From positions 53,010,001-53,074,000 of the forward strand of contig NC_043009.1 of the NCBI RefSeq assembly GCF_006345805.1: DNA of 64,000 nt, written 5' to 3'. A model generated the notes under the pieces. The model was not told the DNA's origin. It saw only the letters and a list, made by a program, of their open reading frames with translations, and did not search any database. Positions 381 through 63,045 of this stretch are shown here, one piece after another (the stretch's first letter is position 1; each line of letters starts with the position of its first letter). Both the position numbers and the translations under genes were made by a program. Source of the stretch: Octopus sinensis. Taxonomy: Eukaryota.

Positions 381-431
381 AGCTTCTACAGGACTAGAAC
401 TGTTTCATTCAAGAGAAATCTTCAGGAAGCT
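381..431 (-). ncRNA. Type I hammerhead ribozyme (group E, copy 1)
   Basis: Reverse complement of 5499-5549: AGCTTC-CTGAAGA-tTTCtcttGAAt-GAAACAG-ttctagtc-CTGTA-GAAGCT. Confidence 0.75.
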
Positions 432-5149: not shown

Positions 5150-5498
5150 TATTATATGTATGTATGTGTGTAGATATATGTATGTGTATGTATGTGTATA
5201 TACATATATATGTGTGTGTGTGTATGTATGTGTGTATGTATATGTGTGTGTGTGTGTGTATATATGTATACATATGTGTATAGGTATAAGTGAGAATCTC
5301 CTTATTTACCTAAAACTCTATTCTTTTATATATTTTTTTATTCTTTTATTTATTCTTTTATCTAATTTACCACTGACTCCTTGACCACTCCCCCAAGTAT
5401 GATATTTTGCGCTATGCCTACCCCCAAAAAGTCCCCCACCACCACCACCCCTTTAAACCTGCCTAAATGTATAAATGCCAATACAATTCTTGTTAACT

Positions 5499-5549
5499 AG
5501 CTTCCTGAAGATTTCTCTTGAATGAAACAGTTCTAGTCCTGTAGAAGCT
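5499..5549 (+). ncRNA. Type I hammerhead ribozyme (group E, best copy)
   Basis: Stem I AGCTTC/GAAGCT; core CTGAAGA 5505-5511; stem II TTC-tctt-GAA closed by U.U; GAAA 5524-5527; stem III ACAG/CTGT; GUA triplet, predicted cut after 5543. Confidence 0.75.
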
Positions 5550-5624: not shown

Positions 5625-6252
5625 TTGATTTTCACTCTCGATAAATTCATCCCCTTTTTGTGTTCCCAGCACTCGGCATCTTAATTTAGGAGCCCTTAAT
5701 TGTATAACTACATGAATAATATTTTTCTATATGAATAATATTTTTGTCTTATGACTAATTCGTCTTTTGTGCTGGGCACCTAGTAGAAATAATATTACTA
5801 CCCTTCTTGTTTATATTCGCATATTACATGATGGATTTATTCGTAAAATTCTTCCCGGCATACCCTATACTGCCGTGTAAGTTTTGCGTCTGCCGCAGAG
5901 ATTTGAAAAGTTAAGATCTGCTATAGTCGGGATCAACACATGGTCCCACATCGCTGCAGACCTCGATTCAATTTAGGCGACTCGCTGACGAAGCTAGCCT
6001 TAGCAAACATATTCTGTGTTTTGTTAGAAAGAAGCAGAAACCGCGGTTCGAGTTGTTAAAGTTATCGGTAAACGTTTTTGATTTTCACTCTCGATAAATT
6101 CATCCCCTTTTTGTGTTCCCAGCACTCGGCATCTTAATTTAGGAGCCCTTAATTGTATAACTACATGAATAATATTTTTCTATATGAATATATTTTTTGT
6201 CTATGACTAATTCGTCTTTTGTGCTAGTAGTAAATATATTACTACCCTTCTT

Positions 6253-6253
<1 letters not shown>
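5625..6253 (+). mobile_element. 453-bp non-coding unit in ~1.4 head-to-tail copies with one hammerhead (retrozyme-like group D)
   Basis: ttgattttcactctcgataaattc… at 5625 and 6078; 3' end runs into (AT)n; HHR at 5976-6057. Confidence 0.7.
5976..6057 (+). ncRNA. Type I hammerhead ribozyme with extended stem II (group D)
   Basis: Stem I GGCGACTCG/CGAGTTGTT; CTGACGA 5985-5991; long stem II (GCT/AGC, TAGCAAA/TTTGTTA, CATA/TGTG); GAAA 6037-6040; palindromic stem III ACCGCGGT; GUU triplet, predicted cut after 6048. Confidence 0.7.
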
Positions 6254-6300
<47 letters not shown>

Positions 6301-10733: not shown

Positions 10734-10944
10734 TCATTTTGTAGCTAATCGCAAAAACGTATGATTCGAAACAGCAAGGGAAATGAAGGAGATATTTGGA
10801 AGTGATTTTATACCAGATGAAGAAATACTGTTGATTGATCTGCATGTGTGAGACATTATATTATACCCGTAGTTTTGCATTATTTTAGTAAACTTTTCTG
10901 GACACCTAAAGTCGGCCAGTTTTTCAATTCCCTCTGCCAAAAGT
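10734..10944 (-). CDS. Putative last coding exon of an uncharacterised Cys-rich secreted/cell-surface protein
   Basis: Acceptor tttttatctttcAG; 1 nt completes CC+A (Pro) from the previous exon; reads LLAEGIEKLADFRCPEKF…SSSGIKSLPNISFISLAV…ATK*. Confidence 0.6.
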
Positions 10945-11289
10945 CTGAAAAGATAAAAATATCATCTTGAAGGTTCATTTTAGTTTTCACAAAGCACAAA
11001 AACAATAGGTAACTACATACAATTTGATACCAGAAAATTAGCAATGGATATTTAATGGGTAAATAAGATTACATATTTACAATGGAATTATAAAATTTTC
11101 AGTTTATTCTCCAGATATCACTTCCGGTTTTCATTTTATAAAATATATCACAACTTTGAAAATTGGAAAATTCGATGAGGTATTAAATAAGAGGTGTAGA
11201 ATATGTTTTCAAATACCCCTCACAATCTTTATTTTCTACTTAATATATTTGGGAAAATGATAAATCAACTCTAATCTATCAAAAGCCAA

Positions 11290-18644: not shown

Positions 18645-19500
18645 CAGGGGTTGGACAAAATAATAGAAACACCTACAAATTTCAAACAAATTTATTTTAA
18701 TACAGGGTAGGATCGCCTTTGACAGTAATTACAGCTTGAATTCTACGAGGTATGAACTCGTACAAAGTTTGAATTGTTTCCAAAAGAATTTTTGTCCATT
18801 CTTCAGCTAAAACAGTCTCTACTTCTTGTAGTGAGGATGGTGGAAGATATCGACTCCCTACTTGTTTTTCTAAAATGCACCATAAACGTTCAATAATATT
18901 GAGATCTGGGGACTGTGGTGGCCAGATAAGATGTTCAGCTTCACTAGAATCTTCCACGTGCCATTCAGTAATAACTTTAGCTGTGTGAATTGGTGCATTA
19001 TCACCCTGAAAGATTGCGTTTCTCTCCAGAAATAGTTCCGGAACCATAGGATGAATTTGGTCAGGTAAAATTCTTAAATAGTATTGACTATCAATTCTGC
19101 CATGAAAGGAAACCATTGGGCCGGCGGATTTTCAAGATATAGCCACCCAGATCATCACAGATCTTCCTACATGTTTAACAGTTGGAAGAAGGCAGTCAGG
19201 GTTAAATACTTCTTTGGCTGGTGGTCAAAAATAAGGTAAAAGATGACTCGTCCGAGAAAATAACATTCTTTCGCTGCTCTAGGGACCAATTCTGTAGGGT
19301 TTTACGCCACTCTAAACGCTTTGCAACGCTTGTTTTTGAAAGTAGTTGTTTTCTGATTCCAGCCCTCTCATGAAATCTGGCTGTGTACAGCTCTCAGCGA
19401 ACAGTTTTTTGGAAACTGGGTTCTCGAAGCGGTCATTAAGCTCTGCAGTAATTTTGGGAAATGTACTTTTGTTATAGTTTCTAATAATTTGCGTAAGAGT
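18645..19500 (-). mobile_element. Tc1-like transposon, 3' part with one TIR
   Basis: TA-CAGGGGTTGGACAAAATAAT terminus; FSDES, FQGDNAPIH, WPPQSPDLNIIE motifs. Confidence 0.9.
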
Positions 19501-21199: not shown

Positions 21200-22330
21200 C
21201 CCAACTATGCGAACCTGTCTGTTGGCTATGTTGAGGCGCAAATATTCTCTAGTTTCACTGGTCCCACTCCCGAACTATATGGCCGTTATATTGACGACAG
21301 TATCGGTGCCACCTCACTCTCCCGCGAACGTCTAGACTCCTTCCTCTCTTTTGTCAAATCTTTCCATCCTGTCCTCCATTTGTCCTGCACTATCTCTGAC
21401 ACCTCTGTCTCCTTTCTTGACATTTCGGTCAGCATTCATCACTCCACTCTTACCACCTTCATCTACTACAAACACACAGACTCACACTCATACCTCAACT
21501 TCTCCTCCCCCGACCCCAAACACACCAAGCTTTCCATCCCCTATTCCCAATTCCTCCGTCTACGCAGGCTCTGTAGTGATGACCATGACTTTGGGACTCA
21601 GTCTCAACTCATGGCTCACCACTTCATCCTACGTGGATATCCCCTCACCACTATCCACACCGCCCTTGCCAGAGCACGTTCTGTGGACCGTGCATCTGCT
21701 CCCCCCCGAACCCGCCCTGCAATCTTTCGCCTCCCTTTTCCCCTCACCTACCACCCCACCCACTTACCTTCCCAACGCACCATTCTCAGAGCTTTCCAGT
21801 CCGACCCGTCCACTTCACACATCTTCCCTAACCGATCCCTCCCCTCCTTCAAACGAGCCCACAACCTACGAGACCTCTTGGTCCACAGCTTCTTCCCCAA
21901 CCCTACCTCCCAACCTGGCTCGTTCCCCTGCTCCCGCCCACGCTGCCGCACTTACCCTTACCTCTCCAACACCACCCTTCTCACCGGCACCCATCATCGA
22001 CCCTATCACATCACCGACTCTTTCACCTGCACCCACACCAATATCCTCTATTGCATCTCCTGTTCTTTCTGCCATTCTCTGTATACCGGACAAACAGGAC
22101 GCCGCTTGGCTGACCGGTTCGCGGAACACCTCCGAGACATCCGCCTCGGCAATGAGACCCCGGTCTCACGCCATTTCCGTTCTACTGGTCACTCTTTGCA
22201 ACACATCCGTGTTCGGATTGTCCTTGCACATAAGCCATGCTGACTCCCGTCTGCGCCCTGAACAGGGATTAATCTTCTCTCTTCGTTCTTTTACGCCGTT
22301 TGGGCTCAACTCTCCTCCACTCTTCATCTA
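21200..22330 (+). pseudogene. 5'-truncated Penelope-like element: RT C-half plus GIY-YIG endonuclease
   Basis: Open frame 21200-22243: PNYANL, RYIDD, FLD, YYKHTDSHSYL, CSRPRCRTC-like linker, ILYCISC…LYTGQTGRRLADRFAEH; frameshift near the end; C/T-rich 3' UTR to ~23090. Confidence 0.92.
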
Positions 22331-23089: not shown

Positions 23090-23278
23090 ATGATAGATCG
23101 GTAGCCACTAAACACATTTTTTCTCTCCTTGTTTCTCTCCTTGTTTTTTTTATGTGTCCCTTTCTGTAGAAGAGCGTAGGCTCGAAATGTAAAAGACTTT
23201 TTCTATTCCTGAACGTTATACATCTGTTTGTTTTGTGCGCCACCTGTCTTCGTCTTTTGTTTTTTTCTCGTGAACTCT

Positions 23279-23283
<5 letters not shown>
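23090..23283 (+). mobile_element. PLE-type tail with minimal hammerhead-like motif (23160-23195)
   Basis: CTTT-CTGTAGA-A-GAGCgtagGCTC-GAAATGTA-AAAG; second copy at 56603-56812. Confidence 0.6.
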
Positions 23284-28777: not shown

Positions 28778-30065
28778 CAGATAATCCCATAAGTTCTGTC
28801 CGATTTTACCTTTTTTAAAACTGAATGAAATTTAATAGTATTTTAGAATGTCTAATGCGATTGAAAATTATTTTTTATGCATTTGTGTACATTTAAACTA
28901 ATTAAATATTATTTTACAGAATAATAGAACCAAACTTTCTTTGATTAAAACCCTTTCTAACATGGAAGTATCCAAAGAGCATTTGAGGCACATAATGCTT
29001 TACGAACCCCCAAAAGGAAACTCTGCAGCCGAAGCGATTCGAAACATACACTCAGTTTATGGGAAAGAATGCTTGAATGAAAGAACTTGCAGAAGATGGT
29101 TTGCAAAATTCAGAAGTGGAGATTTCAGCCTTGAAGATGAAGATCGAACAGGACGTCCAGTTGAGTTTGATGATAATCTCCTTGAGGCATTACTTGAAAA
29201 AAATCCTGCATTATCAGTTGAAGAATTGACAATAAAGCTTAGCTCAAACCATACAACTGTTCATCATCATCTTCAACAACTTGGAAAGGTTCCTAAACTT
29301 GGAAAATGGGTACCTAATGAATTGTCCGAAAGCAACCGCAAATACCGAGTTGAGATCTGCTCTTCTCTCCGTTCTCGCGAACTCATTTCACCCTTTTTGG
29401 ATAGACCTGTGACTAGTGACGAAAAATGGATCTTCTATCGAAATGTTAAACGTCGTAAACAGTGGCTAGTTAAAAGGGAAAAGCTCCAGCACAACCGAGA
29501 AGGGAACTTCATGGGAAAAAGGTTCTTCTCTCTATCTGGTGGGATTGCAAAGGAGTAATTCACTTTGAATTGTTACCACCTAATGCAACAATCAATGCTC
29601 AAGTCTACTGTCATCAATTAGAGCGTTTGAACCAAGCTTTGAAGAAAAAAAGACTCACTTTAGTGAATCGAAAAGGAGTGATGTTTCATCAGGACATTGC
29701 GCGACCCAACACTGCAAAGATCACATCACAGAAGATCGAAGAGCTTGGTTGGGAAAAAATTCCTCATCCACCTTATTCTCTCCGACCTTGCTCCTTCAGA
29801 CTACCATTTGTGTCGTAGTTTACAGAATCATTTGGGGGACATAACTTTCGCAAGCCAGGAGGAGGTCGAAACTGACATTTCACAGTTCTTCGCTTCGATG
29901 CCAAAAGAGTTTTACATTGATGGGATTAAAAAGCTTGTAAATAGATGGAAGGAAGTCATAGATAATCAGGGAAAGTACATTGATGGTTAAATTTCAATTA
30001 AATATAACATCTGATCACTTGTTTTCGCTATTCAAAATTCGGACAGAACTTATGGGATGACCTGA
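28777..30065 (+). mobile_element. Full-length mariner (DD34D) element with frameshifted transposase (~28962-29990)
   Basis: TIRs …cccataagttctgtccg / cggacagaacttatggg…, TA flanks; WVPNEL, TSDEKW, HQDIARP, DLAPSDYHL. Confidence 0.95.
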
Positions 30066-30085
30066 TATATATATTTATATATATA

Positions 30086-31374
30086 CATCGTGGGGAAGCA
30101 AAATTTACAATGAACGTTAAGTTGTTTTTGCTCAGCAGGCACTAAGTCATTTGGTGTGAAACCTATCATATATTGATGTCATAATAATACCTAACACTAT
30201 TATCCTTACCTTTTCAGAAACTTTTCCCATATGAGTAATCAAGAAAGCAAATGTCAAAGAGTGTGTGATTTGCTGAATGCACTCGTCACACCAAAGGAAA
30301 TTTCAAGAATAGTTGGAGTGTCCATAAAGACTGCTTATAATGTAAAGAATAGAATGACTATAAGCAAAACTATTACGAGGAATTCTGGAAGTGGAGGAAT
30401 CAACAAAAAACGTACCAAAGCTTTATTAAAGCTCTCAAATCCCAAATCCTAAAGGATCCAACCAAATCCATGAGAAAAATGGCGATTGAAATTGAGGTGG
30501 ACAAAAAGACCATTAGAAATGCAGTAAAATATGATTTGAGGTTAAAATTTTACACAAGAACACCAAAACACTTGTTGACAACAGCTATGAAGGAAAAGAG
30601 ATTGGAAAGGTGCAAGAAAATTATTACATGGTTCAAGAAAAAGTCCTCCATTGTAACGATCTTTTCAGATGAAAAGATATTCACTGTCGATGCTGTTCTG
30701 AACTGCAGAAATGACAGATTTATCGCAAAATCTATAGCTGAGGTTAAGGGGAAATTCAAAACAAAATATCCTGCTCAAGTTATGGCTGTTGGTGTTGTGG
30801 CTTCCGATAGAAAGAAAGTGCGTATAAAATTCTACAAAGCTGATGAAAAGATCAATGTTAATACTTACTACAAGACTCTGAGATACGAGGTATTGCCATG
30901 GCTTAAAGCAAACTACCCAGATGGTAATTATGTATGGATACAGGATGGTGCTCCAGCCCACACAGCTAGAAAAATACAAGATTTCTGCAAATCTAACTTT
31001 AGCAATTGTTTGGAGTCATGTTTATGGCCGCCTTCTAGCCCAGATCTAAACCCTATGAATTATGCTATTTGGGGGCGTTTTAGAACATGCTACCAATAGA
31101 ACATCACACAGCAATGTCGACTCTCTTAAAGATATTATTAAAGAAGAATGGGAGAAGTTGTCTCTCGAATATTTGAGGAACATTTGTGCAAGTTTCAGGA
31201 AGCGTGTGAAGGCATTTAGTGAGAAAGAAGAAGGACACATATAATAAAAGCATTTTCTATTATGTAATTTTTCTTGGGGCAAATAAATTCTCATGACTTT
31301 CAATAAACTAATTGGTCATACACTGTCTTTCAATTCATGCCTCAAAATATTGTAAATTTTGCTTCCCCACCCTA
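30086..31374 (+). mobile_element. Full-length maT-type (DD37D spacing) element, frameshifted; third Asp reads Asn
   Basis: TIRs gtggggaagcaaaatttacaat; FSDEK, QDGAPAH, SPDLNPMNY with 37 residues between D and N. Confidence 0.9.
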
Positions 31375-33849: not shown

Positions 33850-34860
33850 TTTGATATATCGACCGGTTTCGCTATCGCTATTCATGATATTATGTTTTAC
33901 TTATTTGAATATATATTTTTTCTTAAGAAGAAATTTTGTCCATGTTGTATGTGATGAAATTCACGAGTGAAGGACTTCACAAGTGGATAAATAAAGGGAG
34001 GTAATTGGTTTTCGTTATTATTGTTATTGTTGTGGGTAAGGGAGATAACTGTTCAGCTTTCGGTAATGGGAGGGGAATATATATATGTGCAGATAGAGAC
34101 AAGTTTCAAGAACCTTGTTTAGTGAGGGGATTTATGTACAGTGATTTAATCGTGAATTGAAATATGTAAAAAGATAAAAGTTGGTTATGCGTGCATATTA
34201 AGACGTATTTTGTATTTTTCAATGAAAAAAAGTTTCTTTATTTAAATGTTCTAGTTGAGAGATTGTGTCTTTGTACTGGTAGAAAGGGAAGGCTGAGAAA
34301 TTTGGCTTCATGTCATCTTCACATTTTTCTATATGTTCATTGAGAAGAATTTGTCTGTATTGCGGGAAATGGATTTGCTCTTTATGTAGAGTGGTTCTCT
34401 TTCTCAAGGTCATACTCGTTTGTCCAATATAGTTGTGTCCGCAACCCGAGCAGGTTATTACACAAATGAACCGGTGTGTGACCAGCAGCTTTCCTCATGT
34501 CTCCGGAAATTATACCTACATTGTTATGGATGAATTCACCTTCTCTGGGAAGTTAACAACCTTTTTAAAAGCTTTTTATAAAACTGTGCATCATTAGAAA
34601 GCATTTTAAGTCTGCTTATGATTTGACTTTAAATTTCATAGAACTCACTCCTAATACTTCATGAGGTTAATCAAACTCTCTAGGATGTCTGGAAAACATA
34701 TATGTGATTTAGCTGATGAATACTGGACATTTGTATTTGCTGCAATATTTGCAGCTTCAAATAAAATTGCTCTTAGTATGAAACAATTGTACTAAACTAC
34801 TAATCCATTCTTGTTGCTTTTTTCTTGGTTATAACCACCCCACATTATTTTATGGTTAAT
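33850..34860 (-). pseudogene. PLE GIY-YIG relic with tail
   Basis: VITCSGCGHNYIGQTSMTLRKRTTLHKEQI…EHIEKC, similar to ORF 62053-62583; tail GAAACCGGTC motif at 33854-33890. Confidence 0.8.
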
Positions 34861-34865
34861 ACCAT

Positions 34866-35105
34866 AAAGAATTTGGTGCATCTAAGTTAAGTACCATATT
34901 CATTTGAATTCATTGGAATTCACTTGAATCTTATTGTTTTTGCTGAAAGTATATATTATATAATATATATAATTATATATATATATATAATATATATATC
35001 TATATATATATATATATATATACTTTCAGCAAAAACAATTAGATTCAAGTGAATTCCAATGAATTCAAATGAATATGGTACTTAACTTAGATGCACCAGA
35101 TTCTT

Positions 35106-35107
<2 letters not shown>
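34866..35107. repeat. ~88-bp inverted duplication flanking an (AT)n tract
   Basis: 34866-34953 is the reverse complement of 35020-35107. Confidence 0.9.
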
Positions 35108-35179
<72 letters not shown>

Positions 35180-42224: not shown

Positions 42225-42659
42225 CATAAGCGTAATATAGAAAAAATAAAAATATATAACGTCTTACCAACAAATATGTACTGAGGCAAAACTCTGTTCA
42301 TTTTCGATGGTCTTAGTTTGAGGAAAAAGCAAACAGCTTTGGTTGTGGCTAGGAAAGAGTGTATACTGTTGTGAAGATAAAGAGCTTATATGTAGCAACA
42401 GTATATATGTGAACAGTATTGAATTAAATTTATACCTTTACCTGTTCTGTATTGGTTAAAACCTGATTGGCTGCCTTTACTGAGTTTTCTTTAAGAGACA
42501 ACAGCATCGCATTTGTTCAATACACTTAGAAACCCGTTTTTCGACAATGCACAAAATTGAGAGGTGCAGCGCACATACATACATAATACATACATAATTA
42601 CATACATACGTATATGTTATATAATCAATACATGAACACCAAAAGACGCCCTATATAAT

Positions 42660-42730
<71 letters not shown>

Positions 42731-42853
42731 GAGGGTACTACTATTCGTAGATACCAACACGCTAAGAGGGACCAATGTGGTCAAAACTACTAAAAATAAA
42801 CAAAATTTTACCGAATGCAAAACTTCAAAACACATCATTTTAAAAAGAATTCA

Positions 42854-42917
42854 GTTACATATCACATGTGATTTCGCATTTAATGCAGAATATGCATTTC
42901 ATGTTCGTCAGTGCAAC
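42854..42917 (-). ncRNA. Type I hammerhead ribozyme (group A, copy 1)
   Basis: GTTGCA-CTGACGA-aCATgaaATGCAtattcTGCATtaaATGc-GAA-ATCACATGTGAT-A-TGTAAC; AUA triplet, cut between 42860 and 42859. Confidence 0.85.
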
Positions 42918-43347
42918 AAACTCAAGAAATATAAGAAAAAACATAACATTACAAACTCGATAGCCAACCGTAGAATTCGTCGTAGCTTGTACGAATGTTT
43001 ATCCTTACATATCTATGAAAATGGCTGGCTTTTTCGCAATGCATTTCGGTAACAAATTGCCTAGTCGGAATAAAAATTCAGTATTGAACTATTCCGGTGA
43101 AAAATATAATTAACAATTGAGGATAAAATCTTTAAAAGAATTATCAGTAGTCAGCGTGAGAAACCTCGTAAGAGAAAAAATCCGTAAATTCTTCCTCTTT
43201 GAAAATATTCATTTATATTATATTGAGGGTACTACTATTCGTAGATACCAACACGCTAAGAGGACCAATGCGGTCAAAACTACTAAAAATAAACAAAATT
43301 TTACCGAATGCAAAACTTCAAAACACATCATTTTAAAAAAGAATTCA

Positions 43348-43411
43348 GTTACATATCACATGTGATTTCGCATTTAATGCAGAATATGCATTTCATGTTC
43401 GTCAGTGCAAC
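43348..43411 (-). ncRNA. Type I hammerhead ribozyme (group A, copy 2)
   Basis: Identical to copy 1; cut between 43354 and 43353, 494 nt from copy 1. Confidence 0.85.
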
Positions 43412-44010
43412 AAACTCAAGAAATATAAGAAAAAACATAACATTACAAACTCGATAGCCACCGTAGAATTCGTCGTAGCTTGTACGAATTTTATCCTTAC
43501 ATATCTATGAAAATGGCTGGCTTTTTCGCAATGCATTTCGGTAACAATTGCCTAGTCGGAATAAAAATTCAGTATTGAACTATTCCGGTGAAAAATATAA
43601 ATTAACAATTGAGGATAAAATCTTTAAAAGAAATTTTCAGTAGTCAGCGTGAAAAACCTCGTAAGAGAAAAAATCCGTAAATTCTTCCTCTTTGAAAATA
43701 TTCATTTATATTATATTGAGGGTATTACTATTCGTAGAGGGACCAATGTGGTCAAAACTACTAAAAATAAACTGACTATTGATAATTTCTTTTAAACATT
43801 TTATCCTCAATTGTTAATTTATATTTTTCACCGGAATAGTTCAATACTGAATTTTTATTCCGACTAGGCAATTTGTTACCGAAATGCATTGCGAAAAAGC
43901 CAGCCATTTTCATAGATATGTAAGGATAAACATTCGTACAAGCTACGACGAATTCTACGGTTGGCTATCGAGTTTGTAATGTTATGTTTTTTCTTATATT
44001 TCTTGAGTTT

Positions 44011-44074
44011 GTTGCACTGACGAACATGAAATGCATATTCTGCATTAAATGCGAAATCACATGTGATATGTAAC
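44011..44074 (+). ncRNA. Type I hammerhead ribozyme (group A, copy 3, inverted)
   Basis: Identical motif on plus strand; cut after 44068. Confidence 0.85.
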
Positions 44075-44347
44075 TGAATTCTTTTTTAAAATGATGTGTT
44101 TTGAAGTTTTGCATTCGGTAAAATTTTGTTTACTTTTAGTAGTTTTGACCACATTGGTCCCTCTTAGCGTGTTGGTATCTACGAATAGTAGTACCCTCAA
44201 TATAATATAAATGAATATTTTCAAAGAGGAAGAATTTACGGATTTTTTCTCTTACGAGGTTTTTCACGCTGACTACTAATAATTTCTTTTAAAGATTTTA
44301 TCCTCAATTGTTAATATATATATATATATATATATAATATATATATA

Positions 44348-44741
44348 CTCTTTACTATTTTACTTGTTTCAGTCGTTTGGCTGTGGCCTTGCTGGGGCAC
44401 CGCCTTTAGTCGAGCAAATCGACCCCAGGACTTATTCTTTGTAAGCCTAGTACTTATTCTATCGGTCTCTTTTGAAGAACCGCTAAGTTACGGGCACGTA
44501 AACACGCCAGCACCGGCTGTAAAGCGATGTTGGTGGGGGGGGGGACAAACACATATACACACATACACATATATATGTACATATATACGACGGGCTTCTT
44601 TCAGTTTCCGTCTACCAAATCCACTCACAAGGATTTGGTCGGCCCGAGGCTATAGTATAAGACACTTGCCCAAGGTGCCACGTAGTGGGACTGAACACGG
44701 AACCATGTGGTTGGTAAGAAAGCTACTTACCACCCAGCCAC
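44348..44741 (-). mobile_element. Essentially full-length tRNA-derived SINE with CR1-like 3' tail
   Basis: tRNA-like head (gtggctgggtggtaag…ggttccgtgttcagtccc), body as 1-320, tail ggcggtgccccagcaaggccacagcc…ctgaaac. Confidence 0.88.
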
Positions 44742-52163: not shown

Positions 52164-52546
52164 GGAGGCGCAATGGCCCAGTGGTTAGGGCAGCGGACTC
52201 GCGGTCATAGGATCGCGGTTTCGATTCCCAGACCGGGCGTTGTGAGTGTTTATTGAGCGAAAACACCTAAAAGCTCCACGAGGCTCCGGCAGGGGATGGT
52301 GGTGATCCCTGCTGTACTCTTTCACCACAACCTTCTCTCACTCTTACTTCCTGTTTCTGTTGTACCTGTATTTCAAGGGGCCGGCCTTGTCACTCTCTGT
52401 GTCACGCTGAATATCCCCGAGAACTACGTTAAGGGTGCACGTGTCTGTGGAGTGCTCAGCCACTTACATGTTAATTTCACGAGCAGGCTGTTCCGTTGAT
52501 TCGGATCAACCGTAACCCTGATCGTCGTAACCGACGGAGTGCTTCC
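52164..52546 (+). mobile_element. Full-length young tRNA-derived SINE with 14-bp TSD
   Basis: A box TGGCCCAGTGG, B box GGTTTCGATTCC; TSD AGACATAAAAAATT at 52150-52163 and 52547-52560. Confidence 0.95.
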
Positions 52547-54852: not shown

Positions 54853-55299
54853 GGATCATTTTGGTTTGAACGGCAGTTTTTAACACAATTTGTAGGTAAC
54901 TAAAAAATGTTAAACTTCGTATACTGGTAGAATGTGTTTATAAAACATCTTTTTCTCTTGGCTTTATTGAGAAAATTCTATAATTTGTAAGATATTTGTT
55001 GTTTTTTTCTCTTCAATTTCTGCAATTTCAACCAATCATTGACGTCTATTAAGGTAAAAAAAAATTCTGTGCCGTATGAATATGTCCCTTGTTTAAGAAA
55101 CAGATTGGGTTTATTTACATTTGTGAAGAAAAAAAAGATACCCTTCCCCCCACCCCTAACCATAACCTTAACCCTAATCCTAACTAACCCTAACCCTAAA
55201 ACAGATTGAAATGCAATAGATCGATACTAGGGTCATAATTATGGGTGACAATTTCATATGACACCGCTAGAAAAACTGCCGTGCAAACCGAAAAGATCC
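54853..55299. mobile_element. Second copy (opposite orientation) of the TTAGGG-containing MITE
   Basis: TSD GAACACAC at 54845-54852 and 55300-55307; internal ccctaa repeats. Confidence 0.85.
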
Positions 55300-56602: not shown

Positions 56603-56812
56603 TGATAGATCGTTAGCTACTACACACTTCTTTTCTCCCCTTTTTTCTCTCCTTGTTTCTCTCCTTGTTTTTTTTCTGTGTACCTTTCTGTAGAAGAGCG
56701 TAGGCTCGAAACGTAAAATACTTTTTCTATTCCTGAGCGCTATACTAATACATCTGTTTGTTTGTACACCACCTGCCTTCCTCTTTTGTTTATTTTCGTA
56801 AACTTTCCCTTT
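56603..56812 (+). mobile_element. Solo PLE-type tail (copy of 23090-23283) with HHR-like motif 56684-56719
   Basis: CTGTAGA-A-GAGCgtagGCTC-GAAACGTA; flanked by (AT)n. Confidence 0.6.
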
Positions 56813-56829
56813 ATATATATATATATATT

Positions 56830-57034
56830 TAACAATTCATGATGTGTTCAGAATCAGTTCTGCTGAGGATCATAAGACGTAAGTTAAATGTGAAATCACG
56901 GTGATACAGAACTAAATTCATTTTTTAAATATCTTGCTTTGAAGAACTGCATTTAGGTATGATTAGTGTAATTTTGGTAGTAATTACTTTGTCCCCCTTA
57001 GTGTGAGGCATTTATGTGTATTAATGCCCTCTAT

Positions 57035-57269: not shown

Positions 57270-57908
57270 GAGGGCATTATACATACATGCCAGAGGGCAT
57301 TATACATACATGCCACACGCTAAGAGGGACAATTAGTCATTTCTACCAAAAATATTACTAATCCCACCGAATGCAATTTTTCAAAGTAAGACATTTAAAA
57401 AATATAGACCTGTATCACAGTGATTTCATACTTACGTATTCATCAGCAGGCCTGAATGTATCATAAATAAACGACCCTGCCCCGCTTAAGCCGATCAGCT
57501 AACTGATCAACATCAACGAAGCACATGGGTGAGTTTACATATATTACATCCTGTAAATGGCATACTTTTACGAATTGCATTTCGGGAAAGGAAAAGTTTT
57601 TTCGGAATAAAAATTTAGCAATTAAGGACAACTACTTAATAAGGAAAACTTAACAAGAATTGTCAGGTAGATAGCGTGAAAACCTCATAAGAGAATAAAT
57701 TTCGAAAATAATTATTTCTTATTGAACATATTAATTTATATATAGAGGGCATTATACATACATGCCAGAGGGCATTATACATACATGCCACACGCTAAGA
57801 GGGACAATTAGTCATTTCTACCAAAATTTATTCTCTTATGAGGTTTTCACGCTATCTACCTGACAATTTCTTGTTAAGTTTTCCTTATTAAGTAGTTGTC
57901 CTTAATTG
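57270..57908 (-). mobile_element. Retrozyme-like element, subfamily B: 475-bp unit, partial tandem copy and short inverted segment
   Basis: gagggcattatac at 57270 and 57745; 57826-57908 is the inverse of ~57620-57700; conserved blocks shared with group A. Confidence 0.8.
57407..57452 (-). ncRNA. Type I hammerhead ribozyme (subfamily B), all core nucleotides intact
   Basis: GGCCTG-CTGATGA-ATACgtaaGTAT-GAA-ATCACtGTGAT-A-CAGGTC; GNRA loop on stem II; cut between 57413 and 57412. Confidence 0.9.
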
Positions 57909-57914
57909 TGATAC

Positions 57915-60330
57915 ATTATTTACATTCGACGGAAAATTGTCCTCATCTTGTTTGTTGTTAACACAACGTTTCGGCTTCTTCAGGTGTTTTGGAGAAATTT
58001 CGTACCTGGGTTCTCATTCCTAAGGTTTTTTCGATGTTATTCTTATTGTTCAGGTCACTGTTTGGAATCTAACTCGGAATCTTGGGGTTAGTAGCCCGCG
58101 CTCTTATCCACTGCGCCATATGCCCGTGGGTAATTATGGAGTGAATTTTAGGGCTTATAAATCTAATATTTTCCCATCTGCTGCTCATATCTGCACTCAG
58201 TCTGCTTAGGAGATTGTTGTGTCCTAGCATATGTGCTGCTTCTTTTAGTTTTTGTATTTCCCCCTGGTGTTCTCTGTCTATTATTTTAACTTCATCCCAC
58301 AGGGGGAGGTGGTCTCCATTTTTCCATACATGATCAGCTATACCCGATTTGTAAATATCTACTGGTGTCACAGCTTTGTGATGTTCGTCTACTCTTATTT
58401 TGAGAGGGCGGCATGTTTCGCCTTTGTATAACCTGCCACAGCTACATGGGATGGGTACACGCAGTTTTTGGTCATATTCTCTTCTAATGGTGGTTTTACT
58501 CGAAGGAGATATTTGCAAAGTGTTGTATTACTCTTGAATACTGTCCTGATGTCATGTGGGCCGCATATATTTCGTATCTTTTCGGAGAGGCCTTTCACAT
58601 AGGGTAGACAGACTATGGACAGTGTATTGGCATCATCCTCTCTCTTCTTCATAATTGGAGTGGATAGTATACTTTTGGGGTAGTTGTTGCTTAACAGATT
58701 GTTATTGAGCTTGATCATTTCTTCGTGGTGTATATCACGATTGCTACTTATATTCTTTGCACGATGTTTTAGGCACTGAGCAATCCCTCTCTTTACACTA
58801 TATGGATAGTGGGAATTGAATTTGAGGTATCGTCCAGTAAAGGTCGGCTTGCGGTATACGGATGTCCTGAATCCATACTTGGTGTGTGTTATTAATACGT
58901 TCAGGAATGCCAGCTGATTGTCTGTTTCCTTTTCCATTGTGAACTGTATGGATGGCTTTATTGAGTTCACATGATTTAACAGCACTTGGACATCTTCCTG
59001 GTAGGGCCATAGTATAAATGTGTCATCAACATATCGTAGCCGTAGTGTTGGTTTTAGTGGTGTTGGGGCTAAAGCCAAATTATCAAAGTATTCCATGTAT
59101 ATATTGGCTATTACCGATGATAATGGCGAACCCATAGCTAAACCCTCTTGTTATCGATATATATCAGTGTCCATACTGAAGTAGGTAGTTTCTACACAGA
59201 AGGTCAACATTTCCATCAAGTTTCTTTTTGGTATACTAGTGCGTTCTTTTAGATGGGCGTCTGTCACTAGTTTTTCTTGTATCACCGATAGTGCTTCACC
59301 AATTGGGACTTTGGTGAACATGCTTATCACATCTAGACTCACCATCTGGTTGGATTCAATGGGGGTATCCTTGATCAATTCTGTGAAGTGGGTGGAATTC
59401 TTCACGTACGATGTTGACTTTCCTGCTAATGGACTGATTATATCCAGAAGGAAACGGCTCAGTGGATGACATGCTGAACCTCTACAGCTCACTATAGGTC
59501 TTAATGGAATACCATCCTTGTGAATCTTAGGGAGACCGTACATGTGTGGTAGTTTACTGTGGTGTTGAGTCAATTGTGTAAAGTGATCCTTGTTCTTGAT
59601 GTGTTACAACTTTCTCTCTGTAGCTACCATCACTTTTAAGACTTTTAAGACTTTTTTTAAGAATTTTTCCGAGTAATCAGACTTGTTCATCACCACTGCA
59701 GCATTTCTCTTGTCTGCTGTAAGTATTATGTTGGAATTGTCACTCTGTAGTCTTTTGATAGCGAACTTTTCTTCCTTAGTGATGTTTGGTTTAGGAAGTT
59801 TTGCTTTTTCTAGTACCTGTCTCACATTCCACCTTAGTTCATCTCCCTGAGCTTTTGGTATCTTTATGGCTATCTCTTCAATAGGGACTATTATATCCAA
59901 GTATGGAATACGCTTGATGGTTGTCGCAAATTTGAGACCTTTGTTCAGTACTGCTTCTTCAGAGCTTTCTAGATGTCGGCTACTTACATTAATTACTGCT
60001 TTCACAGGTGGGTGACGGATTTCAGTCTTCATTCTCTGACCTTTGAGTTTCATCAACTTCTTAATCTGGCGTGTCTTCACCATTTCAAATTCTTTCATGT
60101 ACGACTTTTCCAGATCTTGTTGGATTCTCTTTCTATCATCATCTCTGGTTATTTTCCTAAATAATGAAGATAAACTCTCTTTGATTTCGTTATTTAGTTG
60201 ATATTTTTTCCAACAGTTGTAATGGATCCTCTCACGGACGAGGGCATGTCCCGCCTTTTCCACACAGTATATAGCCACAACACACCGTAGGTAATCCCAA
60301 ACAAGCCTACTTACCTCCATTTTCACTTTT
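57915..60330 (-). pseudogene. Near full-length Penelope-like element (Penelope/Poseidon type), frameshifted
   Basis: VINVS…VLNKGLKFA, ADK…VVMNKSDY, YGLPKIHKDGIPLRPIVS, SLDVISMFT, MGSPLS, RYVDD, YRKPT, IPCSCGRLYKGETCRPLKIRVDEH; tail motif 57960-57988. Confidence 0.93.
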
Positions 60331-60744: not shown

Positions 60745-60909
60745 AGGCCTAGAAATGGCTGAGTGTTAAGTAGCTTGCTTACGAACCACATGGTTCCGGG
60801 TTCAGTCCCACTGCGTGGCACCTTGGGCAAGTGTCTTCTACTATAGCTCGGTCCGACCAAAGCCTTGTGAGTTGATTTGGTAGACAGAAACTGAAAGACG
60901 GCCGTCGTA

Positions 60910-60910
<1 letters not shown>
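60745..60910 (+). mobile_element. SINE 5' half (continues at 63180-63385)
   Basis: tRNA-like head atggctgagtgttaag…ggttcagtccc, ends gtcgtatat(AT)n. Confidence 0.85.
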
Positions 60911-60987
<77 letters not shown>

Positions 60988-61029
60988 ATATTATAGGATT
61001 AGCTCGTATACGAGTAGGTATTATTTGTA

Positions 61030-63045
61030 AAAAATGAAGTTCGAAAATGCTGCTATATTATACAAATTTTTAATTTATATATACATTATAACATGTTTCG
61101 GTTTTGAAATGAACCTTATCAAAAAAAGTTATATATAAAAAAAGATAGTTCATGCTATCAAATATAAAAAATTCATTTATAATACACAATAGAGTCAGAC
61201 ATCAAAAAGTTCATATAGTGTGAAGTGAGTTCGTTCATGCTATATTTTAAAGTGTCTGATGCAGTGGTTCATAGTGGTGATATGCATTCAATATAAAAAA
61301 TAGATCAAAGTGGTGATATGCAGTCAATATAAAAAATTGATGTTCCTGAAAGAGCGAGGAATTCATTTTAGATTTTACCTTTGAGCAACTGTGATGACTT
61401 ATGGTCGGTGTTCGCTGGATGATTCTGGCAAACCTTGTGAATTGTTCGGGTTTTATAACACCTGTTAGGTGGTCAGTCCAGCGTAACGTGACGTCATCAA
61501 CGTTTTGACCAATCGCTTCGTTAGGTGGCTTAGTCAAGCAGAACGAGACGTCATCAACATTCTGACCAATCGCGACCTATAGCTGTATTAGAACTGCCTC
61601 TTGTCTGTATCCTGTTTTGACCAATCGTTTCGTTAGGTGGCTTAGTCAAGCAGAACGGGACGTCATCAAAATTCTGACCAATCATGACCTATAGCTGTAT
61701 TAGATCTGCCCCTTGTCTGTTTCCTGTTGGGTGACTTGTCAAGCAGAAAGGGACGTCATCAATATTCTGACTAGTCCCGGCCTATAGTTGTATTAGATCT
61801 GCCCCTTGTCTGTATCCTGTCCAGTCGAACAGAACTAGACGTCATTAACGTGTTGACCAATCAGAATCGGGTCTGACCCTTAGCTGTATCGTATGTGGCC
61901 AGTTCATCAGGGTTAGATTTGTTCGAAGAGATCTTTATATAATTTTTTTTCCTTTTTTTCCTAAGGCATATTTCCGTCAATGTGAGTGACTGTTTAAGGT
62001 AGCGGCCGTGGTGGAATTTTGTTTCTCCTTTTCGGAGGACCTATCTTTTGTTTTAATATTCCTGGCCCAGGGTGTTTAAACTTGGTCTAAATTTTTTTAT
62101 GAAATACAGTTCTTTATTTTGGCGTTGCGTGAAGGTTGCGTTGTCACTGAATTTATAGAGCGGGTAAGTTGTAAATTTCGGATTTACATTTCCAGCACAT
62201 CTATCTATGTGTCCGCTGACCGGTATTTTCCGGTAATCAGGGTTTCTAATTTGTGATTTATGCACCGCCATCCTGTTACGTAAGCTATTTTTTGTATGGC
62301 CTATATACTGCCTATTGCAGCCTGCGCATGTTATGACGTAAATTAAGTTTTTTGATGCGCAGGTGAAGTTTGCTCTAATGGTGAACTGGTGGCCTTGTTC
62401 CAGTATAAATTCTGATCCTTCTATCAAGATGACGCAGATTCCGCAGTTGGGCCTCCCACATTTTCTAACTGCTGGTTTTGTGGTTGATGTTGAGTGCAGT
62501 TTAGCTTGGGTTAAAATCCTTTTCAAGGATTTTGGTTGCCGTTTACTTTTAATGATGGTGTGTGTTTCGAGGATCCGGTTCATCTTTGGGTCTCCCTTTA
62601 GTAGGGCTGTGCTTTGTAGTATGGTGCTGAAGGCCTCATTGTTGAGTGGGTTGTGTGTAGAGATGTAGGGAAGGGTTTTTAATTGTTCTTTCTTTTTTGG
62701 TTTTGTTTGTCTCAGGTCTTCTACACTTAATTTGAGTGCCCTTTGGATTGCACTGTCTATTAGGGGCTGTGGATAGTTTCTATTTGTGAGTGTTGTTTTA
62801 AGTTCCTGGAGACGTGTGTGTCGGGTGTTTGTGTCTGATATTATGGTGCAGATCCTTCTAGCTAAACAAAAAGGGACATTTATTCTTGTGTGTCGTGGGT
62901 GGCATGAATTAAAGGGTAGGTATTGTTTGGAGTCTGTCGGTTTATAGTAGATATCTGTCTCTATTTTTTTGCCGGTTTTCTTAATGAGGAGTCTAAAAAT
63001 GGCAATTCTCTTTCGTTGTGATCCATCGTGAATTGTATATTGTCA
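61030..63045 (-). pseudogene. 5'-truncated PLE (Cys-linker, Neptune-like): thumb, GIY-YIG, repeat-containing 3' UTR
   Basis: LPFLD, YYKPTDSKQYLPFNSCHPRHT, CGRPNCGIC, NLIYVITCAGCNRQYIGHT. Confidence 0.9.
61490..61870. promoter_or_regulatory. Tandem repeats containing (G)ACGTCAT plus CCAAT motifs inside the PLE 3' UTR
   Basis: acgtcatcaa-N6-gaccaatc or a close variant occurs five times; function is inferred only. Confidence 0.35.

What the first reader, a model, noticed from the sequence alone, without database searches (positions are those of the whole stretch)
42731..44315. Tandem 494-bp non-coding units, each with a hammerhead ribozyme: retrozyme-like system
Seen: two full head-to-tail units (starts 42731, 43225, 43718) plus an inverted 1.1-unit copy. 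Each full unit holds an identical 64-nt type I HHR with 6-bp stem I, CUGACGA and GAAA core, AUA triplet and a fully palindromic stem III (ATCACATGTGAT). Established: metazoan non-LTR retrozymes (de la Peña group) are tandem non-coding repeats with one type I HHR per unit; they give unit-length circular RNAs and are thought to use PLE proteins, and palindromic stem III supports dimeric cleavage. Inference: a minus-strand transcript would release a 494-nt monomer (43353->42860) that could circularise. This is longer than the few-hundred-nt units I recall for described families. I cannot check whether this family is already catalogued.
Basis: partly seen in the sequence, partly recalled or inferred. 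Interest (0 to 1): 0.95.

Follow-up and report, generated by a model that had tools for sequence, protein, structure and literature searches.

The report
Octopus-type hammerhead retrozyme repeat array
This is a short non-coding mobile repeat carrying a self-cleaving hammerhead RNA motif, copied into a (TA)n microsatellite by the machinery of Penelope-like retrotransposons; it is a new example of a known class, not a new kind of system.

Summary
Units of 494 and 493 bp plus a 55-bp partial third unit lie head to tail on the minus strand (42731-43772). They meet a 1.1-unit copy on the plus strand (43772-44315) head to head, and both outer ends run into (TA)n. Each copy carries an identical 64-nt type I hammerhead motif, and the predicted monomer 43353->42860 is 494 nt as stated.

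The motif is not chance. Two diverged relatives in the same window (56830-57031 and 57270-57908) keep the catalytic core and stem III, while stem I changes by compensatory substitutions. Rfam's hammerhead models do not reach threshold: family 2 scores 17.6 bits and family 1 has no hit. Position 10.1/11.1 is an A.C mismatch.

Stem III is stable only as a duplex between two ribozymes, so cleavage would need a dimer. The sense monomer is strongly self-paired (z = -4.3).

The tandem and inverted 5'-truncated arms, the (TA)n targets and at least three Penelope-like ORF remnants nearby match published Penelope-like element insertion behaviour.

Published retrozyme units span 51-972 bp, so 494 bp is not unusual.

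Verdict: a non-LTR retrozyme, a new member of a known kind. Cleavage and circular RNA are untested.

The parts
42662..42730 (.). Left (TA)n flank. It abuts the 3' end of the minus-strand array.
   Evidence: TRF 42662-42728 (AT)34; junction ...GTACCCTCAA|ATATATAT read; flank check.
42731..43224 (-). Unit 1 (494 bp), the full repeat unit. Its sense strand, the one carrying the hammerhead, is the minus strand.
43225..43717 (-). Unit 2 (493 bp). It differs from unit 1 by 3 substitutions and 7 single-base indels, none inside the hammerhead.
43718..43772 (-). Partial unit 3 (55 bp, corresponding to sense positions 424-494, with a 16-nt internal deletion). This is the 5'-truncated start of the minus-strand arm.
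43772..44315 (+). Inverted arm of about 1.1 units, with sense on the plus strand (sense positions 71-494, then 1-121). It meets the other arm head to head at 43772. Its 3' end, ...ATCCTCAATTGTTAAT, runs into (TA)n.
   Evidence: (I1-I6); the junction is asymmetric, so this is not a fold-back copy.
44316..44347 (.). Right (TA)n flank.
   Evidence: TRF 44314-44347.
42854..42917 (-). Type I hammerhead motif, copy 1. Predicted cleavage is 3' of A at 42860.
   Evidence: Descriptor scan; own covariance model 71.5 bits, though this copy was a training sequence; no Rfam hit.
43348..43411 (-). Type I hammerhead motif, copy 2. Predicted cleavage is 3' of A at 43354.
44011..44074 (+). Type I hammerhead motif, copy 3, in the inverted arm. 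Predicted cleavage is 3' of A at 44068.
42731..42755 (-). 3'-terminal hairpin plus CUC (GGUAUCUACGAAUAGUAGUACC-CUC), the proposed site where reverse transcription starts. Internal copies lie at 43225-43249 (-) and 44174-44198 (+).
   Evidence: Conserved with compensatory changes in families 2 and 3 (GGCAU...AUGCC-CUC).
57270..57908 (-). Sister family 2. It comprises a 475-bp unit (57270-57744), an 82-bp partial unit (57745-57826) and an 85-bp inverted arm (57824-57908, sense on plus). The hammerhead is at 57406-57453 (-). The left end lies in (TA)n; the right end abuts the 3' end of a Penelope-like element.
   Evidence: sub-threshold Rfam hit to Hammerhead_HH9, 17.6 bits, E = 0.018.
56830..57031 (+). 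Sister family 3, a 5'-truncated monomer of about 200 bp. The hammerhead is at 56856-56913 (+). The 3' end GCCCTC is followed by (TA)n.

Best explanation
The array is one insertion of a non-autonomous, non-coding retroelement of the metazoan non-LTR retrozyme type. It was mobilised in trans by the reverse transcriptase/GIY-YIG endonuclease of a Penelope-like element (PLE), in what looks like an octopus genome.

Shown from the sequence:
- The units are about 494 bp and have no credible ORF.
- Each unit has one type I hammerhead motif about 129 nt upstream of a conserved 3' hairpin-CUC end.
- Two 5'-truncated multi-unit arms diverge from a central junction, and each arm ends 3' in (TA)n.

Inferred mechanism:
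1. The PLE protein nicks both strands of a (TA)n microsatellite. It primes cDNA synthesis on each strand at internal CCUC(A)AU sites of a retrozyme RNA.
2. That RNA was longer than one unit, either an uncleaved multimer or a circle copied by rolling-circle reverse transcription. This follows because both arms run uninterrupted across the hammerhead cleavage sites and across unit boundaries.
3. The two cDNAs were joined head to head at 43772.
4. Transcripts of the array would pair neighbouring hammerheads through the palindromic stem III (AUCACAUGUGAU) into a double hammerhead and cleave after AUA.
5. This would release 494-nt monomers with 5'-OH and 2',3'-cyclic phosphate ends, which a host RtcB-type tRNA ligase could circularise.
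For: Anatomy.

The hammerhead is real rather than chance:
- 7 strict descriptor hits against 0.01 expected in shuffles.
- Three diverged families keep CUGANGA, GAAA and AUCAC-N-GUGAU-A.
- 5 of 7 stem I pairs and 2 of 4 proximal stem II pairs change on both sides. 93% of cells are paired, against 19-47% when the partners are slid.
- Family 2 aligns in register to Rfam Hammerhead_HH9 (17.6 bits, E = 0.018).

Dimer requirement: the stem III hairpin alone is 0.0 kcal/mol and the duplex is -15.8. The cofold minimum-energy structure is the double hammerhead (-35.8 kcal/mol, against about -20 for two monomers).

Sense-strand RNA structure: -122.4 kcal/mol, z = -4.33, against z = -1.78 for the antisense strand.

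Non-coding: the longest ORF is 107 aa, lies antisense, and has no homologue.

PLE link:
- RT and GIY-YIG remnants lie at 58100-60326 (-), 21380-22243 (+) and 62053-62583 (-).
- 8 of 9 element 3' ends in the window abut (TA)n, which covers only 5.1% of the window.
- The tandem plus inverted 5'-truncated architecture and the (TA)n bias are published PLE hallmarks (PMC8557442).
- A purified PLE protein cleaves and extends both DNA strands and starts reverse transcription internally at a stem-loop on multi-copy RNA (PMC11167929).
- Retrozymes have been shown to be relatives of PLE pseudo-LTRs (bioRxiv 10.64898/2026.07.22.740005).

The central junction is asymmetric (sense position 424 meets position 71), which argues against a DNA fold-back duplication.
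Against: - No Rfam hammerhead hit for family 1 or family 3 even at E <= 10 on about 80 nt.
- Position 10.1/11.1 is A.C in family 1 and U.U in family 3, instead of the highly conserved G-C, so catalytic competence is uncertain.
- The monomeric hammerhead fold is not the minimum-energy structure (-8.0 against -10.0 kcal/mol).
- No expression data are available.
- No further copies were found in about 105 kb of other octopod sequence. The host genome itself could not be searched, so copy number is unknown.
- No autonomous PLE with a matching hammerhead and 3' module was found. The neighbouring PLE carries a different minimal hammerhead.
- In vitro, hammerhead cleavage was not needed for PLE insertion (PMC11167929). 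The ribozyme's role in the life cycle is therefore not established.
Confidence: 0.72

Rival explanations
1. The units are pseudo-LTR fragments of an autonomous Penelope-like element: a heavily 5'-truncated or ORF-deleted copy, not a separate non-autonomous lineage.
For: PLE pseudo-LTRs carry hammerheads, and PLEs insert as partial tandems with inverted truncated copies in (TA)n (PMC8557442, PMC4209133). Retrozymes group with pseudo-LTRs in phylogenies (bioRxiv 10.64898/2026.07.22.740005). PLE ORF remnants are present in the window.
Against: The repeat period is 494 bp with no ORF sequence between units. Three independent loci of three diverged families (42731-44315, 57270-57908, 56830-57031) all lack an ORF. 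The family 2 unit is not repeated upstream of the adjacent PLE ORF. That PLE has its own, different 3' UTR and minimal hammerhead, which are conserved in Octopus sinensis.
Confidence: 0.15
2. It is a dead relic. The element was once retrotransposed, but its hammerhead no longer cleaves because of the A.C mismatch at 10.1/11.1, and the array is now an inert repeat with no RNA product.
For: The 10.1/11.1 pair is non-canonical and there is no Rfam hit. The hammerhead fold is not the monomer minimum-energy structure. PLE hammerheads often cleave poorly in vitro (PMC4209133).
Against: The copies are about 98% identical with no change inside the 64-nt motif, so the insertion looks young. All invariant core nucleotides are intact. 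The sense RNA is much more structured than shuffles. Families with A-U, A.C and U.U at 10.1/11.1 all keep the rest of the motif.
Confidence: 0.1
3. The tandem/inverted arrangement is an assembly artefact or a DNA-level fold-back duplication, not a product of retrotransposition.
For: Complex PLE tandem/inverted structures are known to trouble assemblies (PMC8557442). Most differences between units are single-base indels in homopolymer runs, which could be long-read errors.
Against: The junction at 43772 is asymmetric (sense position 424 against 71), with a 16-nt deletion on one side only. The same architecture recurs independently in family 2 (57270-57908). Each arm ends at a defined CCUC-type motif in (TA)n.
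Confidence: 0.03

Closest known systems
Metazoan non-LTR retrozymes (Cervera & de la Pena 2020, PMC7229834), for example the ~350-390 bp repeats of the mussel Mytilus galloprovincialis, and the coral and axolotl families
   Same: Tandem, AT-rich, non-coding units with one type I hammerhead per unit. The RNA is highly self-paired. They co-occur with PLEs. In some families (axolotl) the ribozyme works as a dimer.
   Different: There is no detectable sequence homology. The unit is somewhat longer (494 bp) but inside the published 51-972 bp range. Stem II is long and interrupted, with an A.C mismatch at 10.1/11.1. Stem III is a 12-nt perfect palindrome. The array is short (2.1 + 1.1 units). Expression and circular RNA are not shown here.
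Hammerheads in the pseudo-LTRs of Penelope-like elements (Cervera & de la Pena 2014, PMC4209133; Craig et al. 2021, PMC8557442)
   Same: A palindromic helix III implies dimeric action. Helix II is longer than usual. The insertions are tandem plus inverted and 5'-truncated. There is a (TA)n or AT-rich target preference.
   Different: No RT-EN ORF lies between the repeats. Stem III here is a 4-5 bp stem rather than the 0-2 bp of the minimal hammerheads. G10.1-C11.1 and the unpaired nucleotide after A9 that typify PLE minimal hammerheads are absent.
Poseidon PLE of Anolis carolinensis (PAc), reconstituted in vitro (Frangieh et al. 2024, PMC11167929)
   Same: The hammerhead is followed about 90-130 nt downstream by a stem-loop where reverse transcription starts internally. 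Both target strands are cleaved and extended. Targets are AT-rich. The template is multi-copy RNA. There are two alternative reverse-transcription start sites.
   Different: Here the start sites are inferred only from genomic junctions. They lie about 120 nt apart, not 30-40 nt. The element encodes no protein.
Plant LTR retrozymes (Cervera et al. 2016, PMC4918200)
   Same: Non-autonomous, hammerhead-bearing elements proposed to cycle through a circular RNA.
   Different: The plant elements have type III hammerheads in true LTRs, with a primer-binding site, a polypurine tract and 4-bp target-site duplications, and they depend on Ty3/Gypsy elements. None of that applies here.

Membership tests
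Hammerhead ribozyme, type I | Conserved core: C3 U4 G5 A6 N7 G8 A9, G12 A13 A14, A15.1-U16.1, and H17 not G | tested here: met
   CUGACGA ... GAAA ... U-A^ is present in all three copies, and CUGAUGA / CUGAGGA in the sister families.
Hammerhead ribozyme, type I | Three helices around the core, with stem I open and stems II and III closed by loops, supported by covariation | tested here: met
   Stem I is 6-7 bp. 5 of 7 stem I pairs and 2 of 4 proximal stem II pairs change on both sides across the three families. 93% of cells are paired against 19-47% when slid. Only three distinct sequences were available, so the statistics are thin.
Hammerhead ribozyme, type I | G10.1-C11.1 closing pair of stem II (typical and highly conserved, but not absolute) | tested here: not met
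   A.C in family 1, A-U in family 2 and U.U in family 3.
Hammerhead ribozyme, type I | Match to the curated covariance models of the Rfam hammerhead clan CL00010 | tested here: not met
   No hit for family 1 at gathering threshold or at E <= 10, and none for family 3. Family 2 gives only 17.6 bits against a gathering score of 52, to RF02275.
Hammerhead ribozyme, type I | Mg2+-dependent self-cleavage 3' of H17 | not testable with these tools
   Needs in vitro transcription of monomer and dimer constructs.
Metazoan non-LTR retrozyme | Tandem repeats of a short unit (tens to about 1000 bp) with one type I hammerhead per unit | tested here: met
   Period 493-494 bp, 2.1 + 1.1 copies, one motif per unit.
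Metazoan non-LTR retrozyme | Non-coding, low GC (<50%), and no LTR, primer-binding site or polypurine tract | tested here: met
   GC is 31.6%. The longest ORF is 107 aa, antisense, with no homologue. There are no terminal repeats other than the unit itself.
Metazoan non-LTR retrozyme | Highly self-paired unit RNA | tested here: met
   Sense monomer -122.4 kcal/mol, z = -4.33.
Metazoan non-LTR retrozyme | Co-occurrence with autonomous Penelope-like elements | tested here: met
   At least three RT/GIY-YIG remnants are in the window. One is 83.5% identical in DNA to an Octopus sinensis copy. Whether any intact PLE exists in the genome was not testable.
Metazoan non-LTR retrozyme | Multi-copy, dispersed family in the genome | tested here: inconclusive
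   There are three related loci of three sub-families within 64 kb. None was found in about 105 kb of other octopod loci. The host genome was not searchable.
Metazoan non-LTR retrozyme | Expression as unit-length linear and circular RNA | not testable with these tools
   Needs RNA-seq, Northern blot or RNase R treatment.
Autonomous Penelope-like element (pseudo-LTR-ORF-pseudo-LTR) | An RT + GIY-YIG ORF between the repeated units | tested here: not met
   The units are directly adjacent, with no RT or EN similarity in 42650-44400.
Autonomous Penelope-like element (pseudo-LTR-ORF-pseudo-LTR) | Partial tandem plus inverted 5'-truncated copy, with an AT-rich or microsatellite target | tested here: met
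   compare PMC8557442.

The most novel reading that the evidence does not exclude
The locus may be a natural record of a single twin-primed PLE integration. In that reading both strands of a (TA)n target were extended from a circular or multimeric retrozyme RNA. Synthesis began at two sequence-defined internal start sites, both just 3' of a CCUC(A)AU motif and about 120 nt apart. The second site, TCCTYAATTG, is shared by families 1 and 2. If the template was the 494-nt circle, this would be genomic evidence for rolling-circle reverse transcription by a PLE enzyme. It would also mean that a hammerhead lacking the G10.1-C11.1 pair is functional in a cephalopod, a group in which I found no described retrozymes in the searched literature.
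Probability: 0.3. Interest if true: 0.55.

Novelty: new member of a known kind. Interest (0 to 1): 0.35.

Why it matters
The locus adds an apparently cephalopod family to the retrozyme/PLE-hammerhead class. I found no paper linking retrozymes or hammerheads to octopus in the searched library.

The locus is unusually legible:
- Two divergent multi-unit arms, with defined 3' ends in (TA)n and an asymmetric head-to-head junction, are what the recent in vitro model of PLE integration predicts (both strands cleaved and extended, internal start of reverse transcription).
- Three diverged sister families within 64 kb give a small natural mutagenesis series for the ribozyme stems and for the 3' hairpin-CUC end.

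It also shows that Rfam's hammerhead models miss this type of motif, so annotation pipelines will probably leave such repeats unclassified. It does not reveal a new mechanism.

Tried and rejected
- **Rfam.** I ran gathering mode on the whole window, then E <= 10 on 1.8-kb, 650-nt and 65-81-nt slices. The only hammerhead-clan hit was a sub-threshold Hammerhead_HH9 match to family 2. No other ribozyme class hit either strand, so there is no evidence for a viroid-like or deltavirus-like replicon with ribozymes in both polarities.
- **Pattern scan** CTGANGA-N(10-40)-GAAATCAC-N(1-2)-GTGATA. It matched 101 stretches in metagenome contigs and 7 viral contigs. None of the metagenome matches had stem I longer than 4 bp, so I treat them as chance; the viral matches were not inspected.
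- **Spurious-ORF search.** I searched the 107-aa antisense ORF of the unit to fish out other copies, and nothing scored.
- **Other octopod loci.** I fetched six loci around homologues of the neighbouring PLE RT (about 105 kb, from Octopus sinensis and an ENA assembly). They contain no family 1-3 homologue by blastn, by the descriptor or by my own covariance model.
- **Own covariance model R1.** Apart from its training copies it picked up 34706-34798, which the descriptor had already found, and 52400-52446. The latter lacks G8 and GAAA, so I rejected it.
- **The neighbouring PLE as parent.** I rejected the idea that the PLE at 58100-60326 is the parent of family 2. The unit is not repeated upstream of its ORF, and its own 3' UTR and minimal hammerhead, conserved in O. 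sinensis, are unrelated.
- **Looking up the window's own PLE ORF** to identify the source record: not on record.
- **Chance motif:** rejected by shuffles and covariation.
Full report
**1. The observation**

- Tandem Repeats Finder reports 42717-43738 with period 493, 2.1 copies and 97% matches.
- blastn of the first unit against the window and the repeat finder give the following:
  - unit 1 at 42731-43224 (494 bp);
  - unit 2 at 43225-43717 (493 bp, 98.0% identical: 3 substitutions and 7 single-base indels);
  - a 55-bp start of a third unit at 43718-43772, with a 16-nt internal deletion;
  - an inverted copy from 43772 to about 44315-44321, about 1.1 units long and 98% identical, with 272 nt identical to unit 1.
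- The array is bounded on both sides by (TA)n, at 42662-42730 and 44316-44347.
- GC content is 31.6%.

**2. The hammerhead motif**

On the strand opposite units 1 and 2, and on the plus strand of the inverted copy, the RNA reads:

GUUGCA | CUGACGA | A-CAU-GAA-AUGCA-UAUUC-UGCAU-UAA-AUG-C | GAAA | UCACAUGUGAU | A^ | UGUAAC

- A descriptor scan finds it three times, with H17 at 42860 and 43354 (minus strand) and 44068 (plus strand). The monomer 43353->42860 is therefore exactly 494 nt.
- All invariant core positions are present, the cleavage triplet is AUA, stem I is 6 bp, and the open stem is stem I, which makes it type I.
- The window holds 9 descriptor hits against 0.45 expected from 100 dinucleotide-preserving shuffles. 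With stem I >= 6 bp and stem III >= 4 bp it holds 7 against 0.01.

Two caveats:
- Rfam gives no hammerhead hit for this array. I tried gathering threshold, E <= 10 on 1.8 kb, and E <= 10 on an 81-nt slice.
- The pair closing stem II next to the core (10.1/11.1) is an A.C mismatch rather than the usual G-C.

**3. Relatives in the same window**

The blastn search also found two diverged relatives (72-81% identity in blocks).
- Family 2 (57270-57908) has a 475-bp unit, an 82-bp partial second unit and an 85-bp inverted arm. Its hammerhead on the minus strand is AGGCCUG | CUGAUGA | AUAC-GUAA-GUAU | GAAA | UCACUGUGAU | A^ | CAGGUCU.
- Family 3 (56830-57031, plus strand) is a 5'-truncated monomer of about 200 bp. 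Its hammerhead is AGUUCUG | CUGAGGA | U-CAU-AA-GAC-GUAA-GUU-AA-AUG-U | GAAA | UCACGGUGAU | A^ | CAGAACU.

The full-length alignment shows homology in three places: a 5' block, the hammerhead, and most strongly the ~130 nt from the hammerhead to the 3' end.

On the hammerhead alignment:
- 93% of cells pair;
- 7 of 15 pairs change on both sides while keeping pairing (5 of 7 in stem I, 2 of 4 in proximal stem II);
- sliding the partners by 1-3 columns drops pairing to 19-47% with almost no double changes.

There are only three distinct sequences, so this is suggestive rather than statistically strong. The pattern is still what a constrained three-way junction gives. Family 2 aligns in the correct register to Rfam Hammerhead_HH9 at 17.6 bits (E = 0.018 on a 65-nt search; gathering score 52). 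Family 3 gives no Rfam hit. I conclude that the motif is a genuine, evolutionarily maintained hammerhead-type motif that the curated models miss.

**4. Dimer requirement and RNA structure**

- Stem III alone does not fold as a hairpin (0.0 kcal/mol), but two copies form a 12-bp duplex (-15.8 kcal/mol).
- The cofold minimum-energy structure of two ribozyme RNAs is the classical double hammerhead in all three families: -35.8, -31.1 and -32.9 kcal/mol.
- The monomeric hammerhead fold is not the minimum-energy structure (for family 1, -8.0 against -10.0).

This matches published behaviour of metazoan type I and PLE hammerheads, which act as dimers in tandem transcripts (PMC4209133, PMC7229834).

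The 494-nt sense monomer folds at -122.4 kcal/mol (z = -4.33 against shuffles). The antisense strand gives -88 kcal/mol (z = -1.78). This fits the highly self-paired retrozyme RNAs described in PMC7229834.

The unit has no credible coding capacity. Its longest ORF is 107 aa, lies antisense and has no homologue.

**5. Context: Penelope-like elements and (TA)n**

The window contains at least three PLE coding remnants.
- One lies on the minus strand from 60326 to about 58100. It has an RT with YVDD and a frameshifted GIY-YIG domain.
- One is an EN domain at 21380-22243 (+).
- One is a CX4CX2C-GIY-YIG domain at 62053-62583 (-).

The best named homologue of the first RT is an Octopus sinensis protein (71% identity). 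Its DNA is 83.5% identical over 1.7 kb to an O. sinensis locus. The window is therefore most likely octopod; this is an inference.

That PLE ends at about 57909-57912, within a few bases of the 3' end of the family 2 inverted arm (57908). Its own 3' UTR carries a different, minimal hammerhead that is intact in O. sinensis and deleted in stem II here. It is therefore a neighbour and a possible mobiliser, but not the parent by sequence. The family 2 unit is not repeated upstream of its ORF.

Eight of nine 3' ends of hammerhead elements and PLE tails in the window are followed directly by (TA)n, which covers only 5.1% of the window.

**6. Insertion architecture and mechanism**

In sense orientation the left arm runs from 43772 down to 42731 and ends ...GGUAUCUACGAAUAGUAGUACC-CUC-AA | (UA)n. 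The right arm runs from 43772 up to 44315 and ends ...AUCCUCAAUUGUUAAU | (AU)n. Four features follow.
- The two arms are head to head. Both are 5'-truncated at the junction, at sense position 424 against position 71, which is asymmetric and so not a fold-back duplication. Each 3' end lies in the microsatellite.
- Both arms are longer than one unit. They pass uninterrupted through the hammerhead cleavage sites and the unit boundary. The template was therefore an uncleaved multimer or a circle.
- The main 3' end is a hairpin followed by CUC. It is conserved with compensatory changes in families 2 and 3 (GGCAU...AUGCC-CUC).
- The second 3' end follows a similar CCUCAAU motif. The family 2 inverted arm ends at the near-identical TCCTTAATTG.

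All of this matches what is published for PLEs:
- partial tandems with an adjacent inverted 5'-truncated copy, and a (TA)n insertion bias that hides target-site duplications (PMC8557442);
- in vitro, cleavage and extension of both target strands, internal initiation of reverse transcription at a stem-loop downstream of the hammerhead, AT-rich targets and multi-copy RNA templates (PMC11167929).

The mechanism I propose is twin target-primed reverse transcription by a PLE enzyme acting in trans on retrozyme RNA. The anatomy is shown. The enzymology is inferred from those papers.

**7. Comparison with known systems and novelty**

The element meets every testable defining feature of metazoan non-LTR retrozymes: short tandem non-coding AT-rich units, one type I hammerhead each, a self-paired RNA, and co-occurrence with PLEs. 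It fails the defining feature of an autonomous PLE, an ORF between the repeats.

The 2020 description gave ~170-400 nt (PMC7229834), and a 2026 survey reports consensus lengths of 51-972 bp and shows that retrozymes are relatives of PLE pseudo-LTRs (bioRxiv 10.64898/2026.07.22.740005).

I found no paper connecting retrozymes or hammerheads with octopus or cephalopods in the searched library. A 2026 Octopus vulgaris repeat annotation lists PLEs but no retrozymes (PMC13282606). I could not check Repbase or Dfam.

I therefore class this as a new member of a known kind. The points of modest interest are the non-canonical 10.1/11.1 position, the long interrupted stem II, and the clean genomic record of a two-armed integration.

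**8. What remains open**

Catalysis, transcription, circularisation, genome-wide copy number and the autonomous partner are all untested. The tests are listed under the next steps.

Noticed in passing
window 5625-6255 (+), hammerhead-like motif 5976-6057: This is a fourth, unrelated hammerhead-bearing tandem element with a 453-bp period (5625-5749 and 6078-6202 are 98% identical). Its motif is GGCGACUCG|CUGACGA|long stem II|GAAA|CCGCGGU|U|CGAGUUGUU, with a palindromic stem III (ACCGCGGU). Its 3' end is a hairpin followed by CCTTCTTGTTTA, running into (TA)n at 6256.
   Followed up: partly
window 5499-5549 (+) and 381-431 (-); degenerate copy near 2075-2106: A hammerhead-like motif, AGCUUC|CUGAAGA|UUUCUCUUGAAU|GAAA|CAGUUCUAGUCCUGU|A|GAAGCU, occurs in inverted copies next to (TA)n. 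It lies inside a larger inverted, microsatellite-rich structure (for example 549-769 against 5153-5373, 99% complementary).
   Followed up: partly
window 34706-34798 (+); inverted arms 34859-34982 / 34990-35113: Another hammerhead-like motif, UUUAG|CUGAUGA|AUACU...AGUAU|GAAA|CAAUUGU|A|CUAAA, scores 22.4 bits (E = 0.006) with my model R1. Downstream, two inverted arms face each other across a (TA)n tract. A GIY-YIG-like reading frame appears by eye on the minus strand around 34300-34520.
   Followed up: partly
window 58125-58053 (-) and 57988-57960 (-); L002 about 10830-10985: The 3' UTR of the Penelope-like element next to family 2 contains a tRNA-like stretch (by eye; ARAGORN finds nothing). 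The stretch is conserved in the Octopus sinensis copy. It is followed by a minimal hammerhead, GACAC|CUGAUGA|...|GAAA|CGU|U|GUGUU, with palindromic ACGU. That hammerhead is intact in O. sinensis, but the window copy has lost stem II (CUGAAGA-AGCC-GAAACGUUGUGUU).
   Followed up: partly
window 57908/57909: The 3' end of the family 2 inverted arm and the 3' end of the neighbouring Penelope-like element abut tail to tail within a few bases, with no (TA)n between them. This could mean the retrozyme inserted at the PLE's own end (PLE proteins are reported to nick their own termini), or the reverse order of events.
   Followed up: partly
window 23110-23282 (+) and 56632-56812 (+): There are two copies of the 3' tail of another PLE, whose EN domain lies at 21380-22243. 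Each ends ...CTCTCCC or ...CTTTCCCT directly before (TA)n. The tail holds CUGUAGAAGAGCGUAGGCUCGAAA(C/U)GU, which looks like a hammerhead core with U in place of A6, so it is either a variant or a relic.
   Followed up: no
window 61464-61820 and 60908-60995: The 3' region of the third PLE remnant (GIY-YIG domain at 62053-62583, minus strand) carries 57/93/112-bp tandem repeats. It ends at a small hairpin (CTCGTATACGAG) just before a (TA)n tract.
   Followed up: no
window 55154-55199: A short interstitial telomere-like (CCCTAA)n tract of about 8 copies.
   Followed up: no
window 18697-19116 (-), 28941-29558 (+), 30470-31099 (+): Remnants of Tc1/mariner-type DDE transposases (Pfam DDE_3 hits for the first and third). 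The window as a whole is a mosaic of transposons and microsatellites, with no obvious host gene.
   Followed up: no
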